Shown here in pieces: positions 25,287 to 34,454 of a stretch of 64,000 bases of DNA. The translations under genes and the position numbers were made by a program. Numbering within the stretch: position 1 is the first letter of the stretch; each line of letters begins with the position of its first letter. The notes under the pieces are model-generated. The model was not told the DNA's origin. It saw only the letters and a list, made by a program, of their open reading frames with translations, and made no database searches. The DNA comes from Pecten maximus (taxonomy: Eukaryota): the NCBI RefSeq assembly GCF_902652985.1, contig NC_047022.1, positions 43,710,001-43,774,000 on the forward strand, in the 5' to 3' direction.

Positions 25287-28124
25287 CTACAAAATGATGT
25301 GTCCACTTTGCTTTGCCTTGATCTTGTCAATGATTTCTCGTGACCCTTTAAGGATAGGATCACTGGCGTCTACCACATTACAATGTTTCCGAGAGCGAGA
25401 AGGTTCCCCAACGTTACCCAATTTTAAAGAATATTCATAAATGTCTAACATTGATCCGGCATGTGAGAAGAAGCCTGCCTTCTTGTCTGTTGATAACATT
25501 GACTCTGTAAGTCCGCTACATAAATACTTGTAATTAATGACCAACCAAGAAGCCAGAACAGCAACAAAGTTGATCCGGAATTCACCACCGGAATCTTCTA
25601 CAAGCAATGGAATAGGGGAACTTTCTAGAAGAACATCATTATCCGAGTCATAGAAAAAGAAGACCAAATCTTTGCCAGTCACTCCGATACAAGGAAACAG
25701 ATAATGGTCATCTTCAGAGTGTCTCTGCTTCTGAAGAAATGAAAACACTATTGTCTCTGCAATAATCTGCGGGTTGTTTTTTAAACTTGCTGGTTTCCTT
25801 TCTTCCAAGGAATTTCCATCTGTATTTTCTAAAGGTTTCACAACAATAACATCATCATTGATGATAATATCCAAACTGCCATGCCATACTTCTTCATTTC
25901 CTGTGAAATAAGCATGAAAACATAATTAGAAGATATAATGGTGCGAGTCTGTCACCAAATTAAATTCATACCCTAGTAGATCCAAGTTTTATAAGCACTA
26001 GCATACAGAAGATGCACACAGTAACTACAAACTACACATAAAGAAATTAATTAACAACAATAACTTAATAATTATCCACACTTGATAAAAATTCAACCAA
26101 CATATTTGGAATGTTGTGTTGGATTAAAATGACAACAGCATTAAAAGGGACATAATCCCACAAATTAAGTTTGGTGATACAGTGGTAAACCTTTTACCTA
26201 GCTAAAATATAAGCTGAATTAGATTCCACGGTCAGATGTGGAAAGCATCGAAAGGTCAGCTGTCTCGGACCTTCTGGGTTTTATCCAGATACCTATACTG
26301 TAGGCCGCCAAGAGTGATTTATAAAACTGTGATAACTTGTTTAGGAACTGTTGTAATATAAATCAAGTTGTGATAACTTGTTTAGGAACTGTTGTAATAT
26401 TAATCAAGTTGTGATAACTTGTACAGGAACTGTTGTAATATAAATCAAGTCTTGTGAACTGTACATATAGATATGTAAGTTTACCTGCACTTGTATCGCC
26501 GTACTGACCACTCAGTTTACAATCACTGATACAGCAGGGACACTCAGCGCCTCGTCTCCCCTTAGAGTGCCAGTCGATGGTATAGGACGGAGATGCTGCC
26601 AATTTCACAAACAGGTGATTTGCCAAAAGAACAGATACATCTGTCTCGGAAAACATTTCTGATTGTTCCAGCACAGCATGGGAATCTGAATTGATAATGA
26701 TACAATTAAAAGAATCTTACACCATTATTTGGCATTTAACTCATTACTGAAATAAGTACAGCAATTTTGAAAATAATGTACAGAGTGTGACCGTATGACT
26801 TTGTATATCAAGTATAGATTTTTGTACGTTAATGTTTTTGTACGTTTATGTTTTTGTACGTTTATGTTTGTATGAAAAATACATTAAACATTGTTAACAT
26901 ATATCAATGATATATCCTTCTCTAGTAGCAATGTGTCAGACCATTTGGTATCATGACATCACTTTAATTAAGATGTCATGTGAAAATTCTCTGTCTTATG
27001 CATGAAAAAGACCCACGTTTGATACAATTTGCTGGAGAATTATCCATTTTGGAAGCAGTCTTTGAAGAGTTTAACACATTTGACCCTTGTAGTCATGAAA
27101 GTTGGTAAAAGTAAACTTGGTAGCTCTTCACCCCAGCATGCTACTGGTCCAATATCTTGACTTGTAGTCTTTTAATTATTCGGATTTTTAAAAAGATTTT
27201 TACACATTTGACCCTCTGTGACCTTGAAAGTAGGTCAAGGTCATTCATTTAAGCAAACTTTCATTTGATGCCCTTCTTTTAGTTAATAAGAAGTTGTTAA
27301 AAGATTTTTGACATAATTGTCCCTTTATTGTGGCCTTGAAATTAGGTCAAGGTCATTGATTTGAACAAACTTTAATTTTTCGAGCCCTTCATCTTCTGGC
27401 CCAATTGTTTATTGAGAAGTACTAGTCGCTTACATTTTTTAACACTTTGACACCTGTGACCTTAAAGCACATTCATTCGAACAAAACAAGCATGATTCAT
27501 GATTTACCAGTGTTTACAATACATGTACTAAAATGGTGACCATATTTTATGTATATGCTTAACAATATTGATTTATTGATCACATGTTTGGGCAATGCCA
27601 GCTCAGTATTTGTCATGATAACACTATTCAGTAACTAATAGTTCTACTCTGTTGATTTTGTACAGTCTGTACAAGCTAATATAAGGTGTTAGGCAATTAT
27701 CAATAGCTACATGAGCTACTTGTAGATTTCTGCTAGAGTTTACTCTATTTTTACCTTTATCAACAAGGTAATCCAACAGCTTGCACAATATATGTTTTTC
27801 TTGATTATTATCTGGTAAAACATGGCCATCTAAATAGTGTAGAACCATATAGATTCCCTTTTCAAACACACTACCAAATACATGCAGCGGTTCTATAGGA
27901 CTAACACTGCAATAGGCATCCGGGAATGTAAATCCCTGTTGACAGTCCGCGCCGTTGCAGTTAATTATTTCTAACGGTGTTAATGTGTAACATGGGACAT
28001 TTAAGTCTGACAGAACACCCATACTGATCGCCGTTTTGAGTACAAGTTCGTCTGGGAATTCAGGAGTTGAAAAACGGGCCCTCTTTGCGGGCCCTCCATC
28101 ATCAAATGTTATCTTGGACGCCAT
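25287..28124 (-). CDS. Uncharacterised 394-aa protein, 3 exons (28124-27755, 26685-26485, 25900-25287); possible PD-(D/E)xK-like C-terminal domain
   Basis: ATG at 28124 (MASKITFD..). Two phase-1 GT-AG introns give 1185 nt of open frame to TAG. Motifs WHGSLDIII..EERK..PQIIAETIVFSF. The promoter side is interrupted by a MULE insertion. Confidence 0.8.
26328..26450. repeat. 41-bp tandem repeat, 3 copies (intron 2 of the 394-aa gene)
   Basis: tgtgataacttgtttaggaactgttgtaatataaatcaagt x3. Confidence 0.9.
27050..27490. repeat. Degenerate HINE-type core repeats (~140-bp period)
   Basis: Recurring acacatttgaccc..tgaccttgaaagtaggtcaaggtcatt..aacaaactt units. Confidence 0.55.
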
Positions 28125-29364
28125 GGTACTTGGACACCTCGGCCCTTGCGCATGTCGGTCGGGGCCGAGGTGACTAGACAATTTCGGCCTCTGTAAAAAT
28201 CGGCCCTACTCTATAATATACAGTGTACTGTATAAGTATCCATGTACGTATATATGTATTAAATATGTTAAAAAGGTTCATTTTACAGGGGAAAATGTTA
28301 TTAAATATCAATTTTGAAATATGTTTTGCCTTTGTTTGATTTTTTATGAGACGTATAATGTCTTATGTTTATACGTTTCCGATATATTGTGTTATTCTTA
28401 TTTTATCCTTAAGTGCTGTTTTAATTATTTATAATTTGAAATGACATCAATTCAAATGGTTAATCAATTAATTAATTAATATGAATTATCTTTATCCGGG
28501 CGCTTGGAGCTAAGGACGCAGGGGTTGTTGTTTTAATAGAGTACCTCTTATAAGAGTAGCTCAGTCAATTACCGCAAATCGATTAACCAATCAGTGAAAG
28601 GCACATGAGGTATATTAGTTAGTGAAAGTATAGAACAAATCACTTGATCATTTTCGATCAAATTATTATCTTTAATGATGTCTCGTCTGTGCCTCGCCTG
28701 TGCCAAGTCTGTTTTTACATAAAGTGCATAATTGAATATTATATATGTATTTTCTATATGAAAGAATACTGTTTACAGGAACTTTGACCTGTCGCCAGTC
28801 CGGATGAACTCGACGTTTGTTGTCCCCCCACCACCGGAGCAGTCGCTGAACGCCTCGTTTGACCTGACGGTACAGGATGACGATGATCCCGTCTGCATAT
28901 CGGAGAGGNNNNNNNNNNNNNNNNNNNNNNNNNNNNNNNNNNNNNNNNNNNNNNNNNNNNNNNNNNNNNNNNNNNNNNNNNNNNNNNNNNNNNNNNNNNN
29001 NNNNNNNNNNNNNNNNNNNNNNNNNNNNNNNNNNNNNNNNNNNNNNATTCAAAAATATAAAACAAATCTATGTAATTTCGCAGCTTATATTATAGTCCTT
29101 TATTATCCACTTAATCAACCTTTTCTTACAGTAATGAAGTATATACTGATTTACATTAATGGTGAGAAGTAACTAACTAAACTCCTTATTATTACAGATC
29201 TTTAGGTGATGCGCCCCTCACTGACACCGTCGTGGTAGACGAGGACACCACCTACGAGATCGTGGAGAGCGGGACCATCCGTCGCTGCCGGAAGCTGATC
29301 GCCACCGATGGCTATTCATACACGGTTAAGGTAATTAGAATGAATGGTAAATAATGATCGAGAT

Positions 29365-29802
29365 GATATCTAATATGAACCAATATCATAGCATATCTAA
29401 TATGAACCAATATCATAGCATATCTAATATGAACCAATATCATAGCATATCTAATATGAACCAATATCATAGCATATCTAATATGAACCAATATCATAGC
29501 ATATCTAATATGAACCAATATCATAGCATATCTAATATGAACCAATATCATAGCATATCTAATATGAACCAATATCATAGCATATCTAATATGAACCAAT
29601 ATCATAGCATATCTAATATGAACCAATATCATAGCATATCTAATATGAACCAATATCATAGCATATCTAATATGAACCAATATCATAGCATATCTAATAT
29701 GAACCAATATCATAGCATATCTAATATGAACCAATATCATAGCATATCTAATATGAACCAATATCATAGCATATCTAATATGAACCAATATCATAGCATA
29801 TC
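29365..29802. repeat. 24-bp minisatellite, ~18 near-identical copies, in a transposase intron
   Basis: atatctaatatgaaccaatatcatagc-type unit, giving the MILVHIRYA/NMNQYHSIS repeat ORFs. Confidence 0.95.
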
Positions 29803-30375
29803 AATAATAAGTACGATTATGATGTTCTTAATATGCATTTCTAAATGTCTTTCTGTAACAGAGCTCCAACCCCACCACAACTCAGTGGAGATGCGCTGTC
29901 CGGAACCGATCGACATGGTGCCGCGCTTCCGTCAGCCAGAGAGGAACCACGTTCACGCCCGGATCAGCAGACCACATCCACCCTCCTGACCATTCCACAG
30001 CCATGCTTGTCCGTGTCAAGAAACAGGTAGTTAACTGACTGAATGTTTATCACATTTGTGAAGGAGATAATTGTCACATAGACAGTCTTGCCATTGAACG
30101 AGTAACGATATTATCAATATTGTGCATTGAATTTGAAATAATTGTTCTAATTATTGTTTCAGATCTGGGAAGATGCCAACGCTCAGCCGTTTACATCTGC
30201 GCAGACGATAGTGGAGGAGAAGCTGCAGGCCAACGTTGATGACGACGACTTCGACTTGCCGAAGCCCGCCAACCTGATCCGGTTCGCCAACCGATGTCGG
30301 CAGCACATTCGCCCCGCAGAGCCGGTTGACCTGGACTTTGAGGTATTTACTATATGAAGATAAAGGCCAAAATGG

Positions 30376-30545
30376 AATATAACGACGTACATTTCTTAAA
30401 GTTGTTAAAGCCACGTAGAATATAACGACGTACATTTCTTAAAGTTGTTAAAGCCACGTAGAATATAACGACGTACATTTCTTAAAGTTGTTAAAGCCAC
30501 GTAGAATATAACGACGTACATTTCTTAAAGTTGTTAAAGCCATGT
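30376..30545. repeat. ~43-bp tandem repeat, 4 copies, in a transposase intron
   Basis: gaatataacgacgtacatttcttaaagttgttaaagccacgta x4. Confidence 0.9.
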
Positions 30546-33500
30546 AAACTATTCTGTATTAACATTATTGTTATTTTGATTATCAGGTGAATCGCGAGTT
30601 CCTGGACTGCGATGACTTCATCGTTGGTGACGTCCGTGTCGGCAGCCACCGTCATCTGATGTTTGCCACACCTACCCAGCTTCGGCTTCTGCAGGAGCGT
30701 GTTCCCGGGTGTGGACCTGAAGGGCTGCAGTTTTCACTGGGCCCAAGCTGTCCTCCGCAAGGTCGACAGTCTTGGACTTAGGGCCACCTTCAGGAAGCGT
30801 CAAGGTATTTACACATATAAGACGTTTAACGAAAACGTTATAAGTTACAATCAATCATCCAATGTATTTGTTTATTATAGTGTCATATATATCACAATTA
30901 CAAAATAATAAAATTACATAGTGTATAACAGTTATTTAAAACCATGCTTAAAATATATACTAGTAATATCTTATTACAATAAGCATTGTAAATATTGAAC
31001 TTTATTTCAATTTTTCAGGTGTTGCGGAATACATCCGGAAGTTGATGGCGTTGCCGTTCCTCCCGTCGCCTCAGATTCACGACGCCTTTGTGAAGCTGAA
31101 GCGTCTGGCCAACACCCCAGAGCTGACTCAGCTGGTCGATTACCTCGACAGGTAAAACTTCTAAATATGTGTTTGTTGTGAATCAATCTTATTTATCAAC
31201 AGTTTTTTTCTAATCGTTGAAAGAATTTACCGATAAAAATGTCCTGAAGCATACGATTTCCTGACATTACACGTGTCATTCCATTTATACTCTTATTTTA
31301 TAAGCAGTGTTCATACATTGAAACTCTTATGCATTGTTCCTTTGTACTTTTTAGATACTGGTTCAGGAGCGGTGTCTGGTCGACTGCGAACTGGTGCGTC
31401 CATCGACAGTCCGTCCGCACCAACAACGACGTAGAGGGTAAGTTGTACATATTAATGGGTGTCACAATACAGAAAGCAAAGCGATGCCTGATAGAACTAT
31501 ATTGTCATAATAAAAGTTCTTATTCATTAAAATAAGTCATATCTGATTATATATTTGTTAAATTGTTTTATGATCACATGATTAATCATTCATTTTGTTT
31601 ATAGGTTGGCATCGCAGGATCAACACCAAGGCTCGCCGGGCGAACCTCCCGTTCTACATGCTCGTCCCATTGCTTCACCAGGAAGGCCGCCTGGTCACCC
31701 TCCAGATGAGGCTGGTAGCCGAGCAGGCCCTGCGTCGCCAGCAGACTACAGTGTACCGCCGGATCCAGGGGAAGATCCAGACGTTGTGGGACCAGGTATG
31801 TAAAACTTATTGAATTGAAATCAGAATCATTGTTATTCACTTAAGATAAGCATATACTTCCATAATATATAAAAGAATATATAAAAGGAAATGCGTACAT
31901 TGTACATTTATTAGGCCTATCAATATGTTTTTTTTAAATGTAATTTTTTTTTAAATGTAATCACTTCTGTGTCTTTTTTTTTAGTATGCTGAGCAGGAGA
32001 TCTCGAGCTCGACCTTCCTGAAGACCGTCGGCAAGATCTACTGCCCAGCGACGGTCCGACCAACACCAGACGACGAATGAGGTAAGGATAGATATCAACG
32101 ATATACATAAAACAATACTAAAGTTATACATATAAAACAATACTTAAGTTATACATATCGGTCAAAATACCGCCATGCGAATGTTTCCTCGTATAATGAC
32201 ATTAAATTGGAAATATACCATTATCATTTGACTGTTATTTTAATTTAATTCGTTTCCATTTCAGGAGTATACCAACATCTCCGCGCCGACCAGTTCACAG
32301 TCGAACAAGGCCATGCCACACCCAGGAGGCAGGTCACACACACACAAAAAAAAAAAAAACAAAACATTTTGGTTCTTGAAAGAGGAGGCCTCCACGTGGC
32401 AAGAACTGGTAACGGTATACATCGTTTAAATGCATGCATATACATGCGACGAAATGATATATACCGGCTGACATCCTCTTATAACTTATATGCAATAAAT
32501 TGTTATGGCAGGGGAAGTAACCGCAATACAATATACATTTTAGTTCTTGCTAGTTACCTCCCCTATTAATAAAGCAGGAAATGATTTCAAAACAATAAAA
32601 TTATAAAATATTACCTCCATTATTAATAACATTCATTACATGTTACAGTATAGCCCGTCACACTATTATATATTATAAATAGAGGCCGAGGTGTCCAGGC
32701 CGAGAAAGTATTGGGGCCGAGGTGTCTTAGGCCGAGGACGGTACGGGGCCGAGGTGTCTCTAATTCGACGCCATGACACGGAGGACCCTAACCGCCTTAT
32801 TACCTATCTAGTTCGTAAGAATTTATCGACTATTTATGCAAAATACGGACCATTCAACGGGTCGTACTAAAAACGTGATTACGAGAGGAAAGGGACATAA
32901 CAACAAGCGAATACGGAACAGAGCAGACTGTAAAACAAAATCGAGAAAACGAGTCAAACTCGGTAAAAGAAAGATTATTAAAGAAGATAAAAGGGAATTA
33001 GATTAAGTGTTTTGATGTATCCATATTAAAGACATACAAAGTCAAGGATAGGCTGTCGCTTATTGCAGGACAATAACCTAGCTACTATATATATATAAAG
33101 AGGGATGGGCTTATTACTGAACACTTGAAGCTAGAAAATAAGTATAGGAATTCAGATATTGATACATGTCAACATGTCTTTCAGAACAGTCGTGTTTGGG
33201 CTATTAGCAAGAGTTTCCTCTAACCTTGACACCATGTCTGGTATAGGTCTCCTACATGTATACACCAGACATGGTGCCGGGTCAGAGGAAAGTTGGGCTC
33301 AGGGACTAAATATATGTAGCTCTTCTTCAGGTAATCTGTTTCTGAGGAATATTAGAACATGTCAGACTGTCCAGGGGCCTGTTTGTTTATGCGGACATCC
33401 GACAACCCGGCATGCAGGTTCATCAATTTTTAATGTTTGATATTTCGGGCACATATCTTGACGGACCTGCAGATATTACTACAGGCCTTGAAAGTCTTTA

Positions 33501-34454
33501 TCAAAGCTCGTCTCAAAACAACATAAAAATCAACAGGTCCGCCCTTATTTCATAAATGAACCACTCTGGTCTAACCATTTGGACAGCGATAAACGAAAAC
33601 GGCCCTGTACTGTCATGGCTGTATCCTTGTGTGCTCTGGATGGCCAAGTGACAAGCCTATGATATTTTGTTATGAGGTAGCCACCAACTACTACAACAAT
33701 GCCCTGCCTTCAAATGACTGGCTGTTCATTAGGGGCCATAAAGCAAGTAAACAAATTCCAAATGCTTTACTGCATGTCCTCACTTTATCAACTGCAGCTG
33801 ATCTTTCTATCTTAGTGTTCCCAGCAGTTAGTGTTCAGGTTCATCTCCTCAGGTCATCCGTCCTTAAATGACATTAGGGGTTGATAGGACGTTAAACAAT
33901 ACAAAACTTAACCCCAGGTTGTCTTGCCCCTCACATTTTTTGTTGTTTCCTATCATACATACTCATAGGGTCATTTACACCTTTAATTATTCTCTATTAA
34001 GAATCACACATATAAACTTGTTTTAAATTAATAATTTCAAACAACAAATAAGTCAATAAATATTACATATTAAAATAATTTATTGCCAAAAAGACATCTT
34101 AGAAATAATTATTTGGCAAAATATGTAGGATTCCAACAGTACCTGACATCAGTTTAATACTCATTAATTAGGTATACAGACTGCAGCAGTTTTGACATAT
34201 TTATCATAATGCATAGGTCTTTATTAAAAGATGAATGCCTGAATATTCAATTGAATATGAATTCTTTACTATATAAGCCACAGTTGGCTATAAGAACATA
34301 ATGTACATACTTATTTACATATTTACAACAAAAAGAATATATACACAAATGATAGGAACTACAATACCTAATTATACATAAACATCAGAAATTAAACTGT
34401 AGACAGCTGAAATATTTGTAAGCTACAGGTGATCACTTCTGATGAGTTTCTGTA

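What the first reader, a model, noticed from the sequence alone, without database searches (positions are those of the whole stretch)
28117..32775. Mutator transposon inserted exactly at a host start codon, duplicating the ATG and separating the gene from its promoter
Seen: the TSD GACGCCATG reads C-ATG-GCG-TC on the minus strand, i.e. the first codons (M-A-S) of the 394-aa gene. The upstream copy (32774) now reads ATG GCG TCG AAT TAG (MASN*). The downstream copy (28124) still opens the intact ORF in a good context (accATGG) supplied by the TIR. Known: Mutator elements make 9-bp TSDs and favour gene 5' ends. Inference: this is either a natural null allele, or the gene is now driven by an outward-facing TIR promoter. 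Excision leaving both TSD copies would add 9 nt and keep the frame.
Basis: partly seen in the sequence, partly recalled or inferred. Interest (0 to 1): 0.8.

Follow-up and report, generated by a model that had tools for sequence, protein, structure and literature searches.

The report
Jumping gene landed on a start codon
In this scallop genome a recently active, internally deleted Mutator-type jumping gene sits exactly on the start codon of a gene of unknown function, cutting it off from its upstream DNA; other individuals seem to lack the insertion, so this is an ordinary but tidy natural insertion allele.

Summary
GACGCCATG stands at 28117-28125 and 32767-32775, flanking a 4,641-bp element (28126-32766). 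Its termini recur at 99-100% identity at eight or more other places in the genome, each with its own 8/9-bp duplication.

The element is Mutator-like (MULE). The window copy has lost about 1 kb that holds the catalytic core. It shares that deletion with a copy on another scaffold, so it is non-autonomous and was moved in trans.

The duplicated ATG is the true start of a three-exon, 394-codon minus-strand gene:
- An RNA contig confirms both introns.
- The Argopecten orthologue and the scallop paralogues begin at the aligned Met.
- Conserved N-terminal motifs lie just after it.
- An in-frame stop lies 12 codons upstream in the far flank.

The N gap (28909-29046) is inside the element. Its two sides are 132-136 bp apart in sister copies.

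Contigs from two other DNA samples and one RNA sample leave the reference exactly at 28125 and continue with non-element letters (709, 21 and 7). This points to an empty-site allele, but I did not see those letters.

Whether the insertion allele is null or driven from the element's end remains untested; I favour null or strongly reduced. It is a new member of a known kind, of modest interest.

The parts
28117..28125 (.). Gene-proximal copy of the target-site duplication GACGCCATG. On the minus strand it holds the start codon (28124-28122) of the intact ORF. Base 28125 may be the element's first base instead.
32767..32775 (.). Promoter-proximal copy of the duplication. On the minus strand ATG (32774-32772) now opens a 4-codon ORF, MASN*, ending at 32760 inside the element.
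28126..32766 (+). Internally deleted (non-autonomous) Mutator-like element, 4,641 bp including the N gap. Transposase remnants lie on the + strand, antisense to the host gene.
28126..28220 (+). Left terminal region: 7-8 nt, then the 13-nt core GACACCTCGGCCC (28133-28145), a second GGCCGAGGTG motif at 28163, and a TATA-like CTCTATAATATA block at about 28209-28220.
32669..32766 (+). Right terminal region: a TATA-like block, three direct GGCCGAGGTGTC motifs (32684, 32715, 32747), and the terminus ...CTCTAATTC.
28909..29046 (.). Assembly gap (N) inside the element. Its sides are 132-136 bp apart in sister copies. Not filled and not read.
29366..29806. 27-bp minisatellite (16.4 copies) inside the element. 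Copy number differs between copies. It made read laying refuse the whole stretch.
30375..30546 (.). 43-bp tandem repeat (4 copies) inside the element.
30694..30697 (+). Deletion junction with 4-bp overlap. About 1.0 kb present in copy C14 (about 0.62 kb in C2) is missing here. That stretch holds the exon with the W..DGTFK motif and the DFE motif of the catalytic core.
30698..30815 (+). Remnant transposase exon with the C-x2-H motif (GCSFHWAQAV, Cys-His at 30726-30737). The matching exon of copy C14 hits Pfam Transposase_mut.
27755..28124 (-). Host gene exon 1 (370 nt, M1 to K123 plus 1 nt). It encodes the conserved KRxR and F-S/T-x-F-P-E motifs. An alternative Met35 lies at 28022-28020.
26485..26685 (-). 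Host gene exon 2 (201 nt).
25287..25900 (-). Host gene exon 3 coding part (614 nt including the stop).
32776..33190 (-). Single-copy native upstream flank of the host gene, now 4.65 kb from the ORF. An in-frame stop lies 12 codons before the upstream ATG copy. The promoter and transcription start are not mapped. Repeats begin beyond about 33200.

Best explanation
A non-autonomous deletion derivative of a recently active Mutator-like (MULE) family inserted into the target GACGCCATG. It was moved in trans by a transposase made elsewhere in the genome. That target spans positions -1 to +8 of the coding sequence of a three-exon, 394-codon scallop gene of unknown function.

Repair of the staggered cut duplicated the target, so an ATG stands at both junctions. 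The native upstream DNA now lies 4.65 kb away. It leads into MASN* and then into antisense element sequence. The intact ORF keeps its own ATG next to the element's left end.

The insertion is young and polymorphic. The reference carries it, and other individuals appear to carry the empty site and express the correctly spliced mRNA.

The most likely consequence for the carrier allele is loss or strong reduction of the protein. The structure, the family, the start codon and the deletion are shown. The empty-site allele is strongly suggested. The loss of function is inferred.
For: - **Duplication and copies:** exact 9-bp duplication at termini that recur with different 8/9-bp duplications in copies on C14, C2, C10, C77, C155, C12 and C17. 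Copies are 99-100% identical.
- **Non-autonomous:** the window copy lacks about 1 kb that in C14 encodes the DGTFK and DFE core. The C77 copy has the same deletion but different flanks and a different duplication, so the derivative itself has transposed.
- **MULE signature:** PF10551 at E=0.024 (profile positions 2-50) and PF00872 at E=0.052 (positions 236-298) on consecutive exons. Mollusc homologues give PF10551 at E=0.004-0.006.
- **Start codon:** the Argopecten isoform X1 and the scallop paralogues start at the aligned Met. KRxR and FPE motifs are conserved after it. The paralogue on C1 has a stop 4 codons before its ATG. The window has an in-frame stop 12 codons upstream in the far flank.
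- **Expression elsewhere:** RNA contigs confirm splicing and reach 28125.
- **Empty site:** X4 has a 1,490-nt contig covering 27345-28125 plus 709 letters unlike the element. X1 has 21 such letters and RNA run X14 has 7. The X5 contig stops exactly at 28125. No listed contig bridges 28125/28126.
- **Read-through is hopeless for translation:** a transcript read through from the native side would carry 114 ATG triplets and 9 AATAAA/ATTAAA signals before the real ATG.
Against: - I did not see the letters beyond 28125 in the other samples, so their identity with 32776 onward is inferred.
- All runs are contigs. They cannot show transcript starts or levels, and the one RNA sample may not carry the insertion.
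- Loss of function therefore rests on reasoning alone.
- The Pfam matches are below the curated cut-offs because introns split the domain.
- The native promoter is not mapped.
- The element's end gives the ATG a strong context and holds a TATA-like block about 90 bp away, so expression from the element cannot be excluded.
Confidence: 0.6

Rival explanations
1. The gene on the insertion allele is still expressed. Transcription starts in the element's left terminal region and reads outward into exon 1. This is what happens at Mu-suppressible maize alleles, and it would give a promoter-swap allele rather than a null.
For: - In maize, 20 of 33 Mu insertion alleles gave transcripts that start in Mu and read into the gene. 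Most of these start in the terminal repeat, in either orientation (bioRxiv 10.1101/2023.06.05.543741).
- Here a TATA-like block lies about 85-95 bp inside each end.
- The element supplies A at -3 of the ATG.
- A leader that starts within the last 28 nt of the element would contain no upstream ATG.
Against: - RNA run X14 has no contig on 28126-29365, and its exon-1 contig continues with letters unlike the element. That individual may simply lack the insertion.
- A start further in than 28153 adds an out-of-frame 14-codon ORF that overlaps the main ATG.
- This family's ends are short and unrelated to the roughly 215-bp maize Mu repeats, so the maize promoter cannot be assumed.
Confidence: 0.2
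2. The ATG at 28124 is not the working start. Translation normally begins at Met35 (28022) or in an unseen upstream exon. The insertion would then lie in the 5' UTR or an intron, not on the start codon.
For: Four of the five annotated Argopecten irradians isoforms (366 aa) begin at the Met that aligns with Met35.
Against: - Isoform X1 of the same Argopecten gene (406 aa) and six paralogues begin at a Met aligned with M1.
- The KRxR and F-S/T-x-F-P-E motifs between M1 and Met35 are conserved across the family.
- An in-frame stop lies 12 codons upstream in the far flank.
- There is no AG acceptor directly before the ATG in that flank.
Confidence: 0.07
3. The element belongs to another superfamily with 8-9-bp duplications (hAT, Merlin or P) and not to Mutator.
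For: Pfam matches are below the curated thresholds. The terminal repeats are short and imperfect. The duplication may be 8 bp.
Against: - The only transposase families hit are the two Mutator-type ones. They fall on consecutive exons, in the right order and at the right profile positions.
- The E-values are already corrected for 24,736 families.
- No hAT, Merlin or P family matched any piece.
Confidence: 0.05
4. The insertion is an assembly artefact, such as a chimeric join across the N gap, and not a real allele.
For: - An N gap lies inside the element.
- No listed contig of the DNA runs bridges 28125/28126.
- Contigs of X1, which may be the source sample, carry T at 27826 where the window has C.
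Against: - A perfect duplication at exactly the family's termini is the mark of real transposition.
- The copy is collinear end to end with the C77 copy, and the gap has the expected size.
- De Bruijn contigs normally break at the edges of repeats.
Confidence: 0.03

Closest known systems
Maize Mu insertions at gene 5' ends, e.g. hcf106-mum1 (Mu1 in the promoter/leader; Mu-suppressible alleles)
   Same: - A non-autonomous Mutator-type element with a 9-bp duplication at the very 5' end of a gene.
- The same question arises: null allele, or rescue by an outward-reading promoter in the element's end (10.1101/2023.06.05.543741; PMC2774946).
   Different: - This is an animal (scallop) family with short, imperfect terminal repeats: a 13-nt core plus repeated 12-mers, against about 215 bp in maize.
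- The insertion lies on the start codon itself, so the ATG is duplicated.
- No transcript evidence for an outward promoter exists here.
Two-component MuDR/Mu (and Ac/Ds) systems: deletion derivatives moved in trans
   Same: The window copy lacks the catalytic core and keeps both ends. A second copy with the identical deletion sits at another locus with its own duplication.
   Different: I did not identify an intact autonomous source copy. The longer copies I examined (C14, C2) carry other rearrangements.
MULE families catalogued in bivalves (PMC10294476)
   Same: The paper reports MULEs in all the mollusc genomes it analysed, and its curated library includes 39 autonomous MULE consensus sequences. 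The transposase exon here has homologues in Mytilus edulis.
   Different: That work is a census. It does not describe this family, its recent activity or this insertion.

Membership tests
Mutator / MULE superfamily of DNA transposons | Target-site duplication of about 9 bp (range 8-11) | tested here: met
   9 bp in the window. Eight copies show 9 bp (four of them plus an extra G), or 8 bp under the alternative reading.
Mutator / MULE superfamily of DNA transposons | Inverted terminal sequences shared by all copies | tested here: met
   GACACCTCGGCCC lies at nt 8/9-21 of both ends, with repeated GGCCGAGGTGTC motifs. The repeats are short and imperfect, unlike maize Mu.
Mutator / MULE superfamily of DNA transposons | DDE transposase matching the MULE / Transposase_mut profiles | tested here: inconclusive
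Sister copy C14: PF10551 E=0.024 (15.5 bits, cut-off 27.6) and PF00872 E=0.052, on consecutive exons. Homologues reach E=0.004. All are below the curated cut-offs because introns split the domain.
Mutator / MULE superfamily of DNA transposons | C/D-x2-H motif after the second catalytic Asp (criterion recalled from the literature, not re-read here) | tested here: met
   GCSFHWAQAV is encoded at about 30723-30752 and in C14.
Non-autonomous deletion derivative in a two-component system | Internal deletion of the catalytic region with both ends kept, and evidence that the derivative moved | tested here: met
   About 1.0 kb is missing relative to C14 at 30694-30697. The same junction occurs in C77, which has different flanks and a different duplication.
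Non-autonomous deletion derivative in a two-component system | An intact autonomous copy in the same genome | not tested
   I examined only five copies in full. None is obviously intact.
Mu-suppressible / outward-promoter allele (hcf106-mum1 type) | Transcripts that start in the element's end and read into the gene | not testable with these tools
   Only contigs were available. The one RNA run shows no element letters joined to exon 1, and the genotype of that animal is unknown.
Polymorphic transposon insertion (presence/absence allele) | An empty site in other individuals | tested here: inconclusive
   Contigs of X4 (709 letters), X1 (21) and X14 (7) leave the reference at 28125 with letters unlike the element, and the X5 contig ends at 28125. 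The letters were not shown, so the join to 32776 is inferred. The assembly holds no haplotig with the empty site.

The most novel reading that the evidence does not exclude
The scallop element's short terminal region works as an outward-reading minimal promoter, like maize Mu ends. The carrier allele would then stay expressed under the gene's own enhancers. That would be an animal counterpart of Mu suppression, in a MULE family that is still moving.
Probability: 0.12. Interest if true: 0.6.

Novelty: new member of a known kind. Interest (0 to 1): 0.35.

Why it matters
This is a clean natural allele in which a young transposon separates an intact ORF, start codon included, from its upstream DNA.

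With genotyped animals and existing RNA-seq it could show whether an animal MULE end can drive a neighbouring gene, as maize Mu ends do. It would also give a natural knock-out or knock-down of one member of a scallop-expanded, domain-less protein family.

It also documents a MULE family with near-identical copies, deletion derivatives that have moved, and presence/absence variation. That suggests DNA-transposon activity that is current or very recent in what is very probably Pecten maximus. None of this is unexpected in kind.

Tried and rejected
- **Conserved upstream block.** A 122-bp block (33440-33561) is 86% identical to DNA upstream of the C1 paralogue. It looked like a conserved promoter, but it is a high-copy repeat with 755 candidate matches, so I dropped it as evidence.
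- **Word search with exon 1** found nothing in its length range. The full HMMER search was needed.
- **Pfam on host exons and family members** gave no credible domain.
- **Pfam on the putative zinc-finger exons of the element** gave nothing.
- **Haplotig search.** I found no alternative haplotig with the empty site in the assembly.
- **Spliced models.** Both the host gene and the transposase were searched exon by exon only. I left out the joined-protein search.
Full report
**Observation.** The window reads GACGCCATG at 28117-28125, immediately followed by GTACTTGGACACC.... It reads GACGCCATG again at 32767-32775, immediately preceded by ...GTGTCTCTAATTC. On the minus strand the upstream copy reads ATG GCG TCG AAT TAG. 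The downstream copy opens the long ORF MASKITFDD..., with A at -3 and G at +4; the -2 and -3 bases come from the element.

**It is a mobile element, and the boundaries are real.**
- The first 375 bp and last 367 bp of the insert recur at 99-100% identity on contigs C14, C2, C10, C12, C77 and C391, and at 89-97% on others.
- At every copy where both ends were recovered, the sequence changes at the same two terminal nucleotides and is flanked by its own short duplication: GGGATAAAT, AGTGGGTCG, GGTCAGAGT, CATTCGGAA, GTTTTGACC and others.
- A G always precedes GTAC at the left end. In four copies it lies outside a 9-bp duplication.
- The window's duplication can therefore be counted as 9 bp, or as 8 bp plus the element's first G. 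Neither the duplicated ATG nor the inferred empty site depends on which.

**The gap.** The N run at 28909-29046 lies inside the element. In the collinear sister copy on C77 the two sides of the gap lie 132 bp apart, and in the C2 copy 136 bp, against 138 N here. I compared distances only and neither read nor filled the letters. The gap does not affect either junction or the host gene. The frame of the transposase remnant across it is unknown.

**What kind of element.**
- The + strand carries exon-like pieces of a transposase.
- Compared with the C14 and C2 copies, the window copy lacks about 1.0 kb and 0.62 kb respectively at 30694-30697, with a 4-bp overlap at the junction.
- In C14 the missing stretch encodes ...FATPTQLRLLQQARRWYCDGTFK... 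and a DFE-containing exon, which is the catalytic core.
- The C14 exon matches Pfam MULE (PF10551, E=0.024, profile positions 2-50). The next exon, also present in the window and carrying GCSFHWAQAV, matches Transposase_mut (PF00872, E=0.052, positions 236-298).
- Homologues of the first exon, including a Mytilus edulis protein, give PF10551 at E=0.004-0.006.
- These scores fall below the curated cut-offs because introns split the domain. But they are the only transposase families hit, and they come in the right order and at the right profile positions.
- The terminal repeats are short: a 13-nt core at nt 8/9-21 of each end, plus repeated GGCCGAGGTGTC motifs.
- The C77 copy has the same internal deletion but different flanks and a different duplication. 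The deleted derivative has therefore itself transposed and must have been moved in trans.
- MULEs are reported in all analysed mollusc genomes (PMC10294476).

**The host gene and its start codon.**
- The minus-strand gene has three exons, 28124-27755, 26685-26485 and 25900-25287, totalling 394 codons.
- One RNA contig of run X14 covers exon 3, exon 2 and the end of exon 1 with exactly these junctions.
- A profile of exon 1 and its paralogue found 64 relatives among 1.84 billion proteins. The named ones are uncharacterised proteins of about 400 aa from Pecten maximus and Argopecten irradians.
- One of them sits on a contig of 60,076,705 bp, the exact length of C1 of this genome. The genome is therefore very probably Pecten maximus.
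- In the alignment the Argopecten orthologue isoform X1 and six paralogues begin with a Met aligned to M1. A KRxR motif and an F-S/T-x-F-P-E motif follow within 25 residues.
- Four shorter Argopecten isoforms start at the equivalent of Met35.
- The C1 paralogue has the same three-exon structure and a stop 4 codons before its ATG.
- In the window's far flank an in-frame stop lies 12 codons before the upstream ATG copy.
- No Pfam family fits the protein.

All four runs are contigs.
- I checked how minus-strand records are numbered, using X4 record 20 and its 109-letter loose end behind 28713.
- On that basis, X4 has a 1,490-nt contig that matches 27345-28125 and carries 709 further letters beyond 28125 that do not match the element.
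- X1 carries 21 such letters and RNA run X14 carries 7. The X5 contig ends exactly at 28125.
- No listed contig bridges 28125/28126. An insertion-bearing haplotype alone should give contigs that run about 30 nt into the element.
- The X4 contig differs from the window at five sites. The X14 exon-1 contig differs at none.
- This is what an empty-site allele would give in several individuals, and what its expressed mRNA would give in X14.
The join to 32776 is inferred.

**Consequence.**
- A transcript from the native upstream side would meet MASN*. It would then cross 4.6 kb of antisense element carrying 114 ATG triplets and 9 AATAAA/ATTAAA signals before reaching the real ATG. It cannot serve the ORF unless the element is spliced out.
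- Expression would otherwise need a start inside the element's left end. A TATA-like block lies 85-95 bp in.
- A start upstream of 28153 adds an out-of-frame 14-codon ORF that overlaps the main ATG.
- In maize, 20 of 33 Mu alleles gave such outward transcripts (10.1101/2023.06.05.543741). But these scallop ends are unrelated to the maize repeats.
- The X14 RNA shows no element sequence, and the genotype of that animal is unknown.
- I therefore favour a null or strongly reduced allele (about 0.6) over promoter replacement (about 0.2). Neither was tested.

**Other checks.**
- An apparent conserved upstream block shared with the paralogue is a high-copy repeat, so I dropped it.
- The 100 bp to the left of the family's insertions have 31-51% G+C, and 8 of 12 are at or above 42%, against 36% for the window. 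This hints weakly at a preference for gene-like DNA.

**Verdict.** The finding is real and well read. It is a young, probably polymorphic insertion of a non-autonomous MULE exactly on a start codon. It is a new member of a known kind, and its main value is as a ready-made test of outward transcription from an animal MULE.

Noticed in passing
window 27007-27423: Intron 1 of the host gene holds a very high-copy short repeat. Contig depths reach 16,000-150,000 in the DNA runs, against about 10-60 beside it. Many joints and loose ends fall there.
   Followed up: no
window 33200-33300 and 33420-33580: Two high-copy repeats lie upstream of the host gene. One is a roughly 90-bp element that matches on both strands at 70 or more places. 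The other is a roughly 150-bp repeat with 755 candidate matches, and it also lies upstream of the C1 paralogue.
   Followed up: partly
window 29366-29806; L037, L038, L040: The 27-bp minisatellite inside the element lies between the two halves of a putative zinc-finger coding region (...GYSYTVK / WRCAVRN...C...H.H). Its copy number differs between otherwise near-identical copies.
   Followed up: partly
L038 (G000:C14) 2319-2882: In the C14 copy the DFE-containing exon region is itself tandemly repeated. A segment of about 50 aa recurs at least four times in shifting frames. This longer copy is therefore probably not an intact transposase gene either.
   Followed up: no
window 28610-29178 and 28713: Run X5 holds a joint that skips 28610-29178, matching the deletion seen in copy C14. 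Run X4 has a contig that leaves the element at 28713, the breakpoint shared by copies C2 and C10. The family's variants thus exist in other individuals too.
   Followed up: no
P0007-P0070; G000:C1 (L042 2928-6819): The host gene belongs to a scallop-expanded family of proteins of about 400 aa with no Pfam domain. Its N-terminal module also occurs 6-8 times in giant proteins (P0027 at 5,640 aa, P0060, P0063). Another note of this scan (s1-792467) suggests a PD-(D/E)xK site, which I did not test.
   Followed up: partly
window 27826: The window has C, but contigs of X1 (possibly the source sample) and X4 have T. This is either a haplotype difference or a residual assembly error.
   Followed up: no
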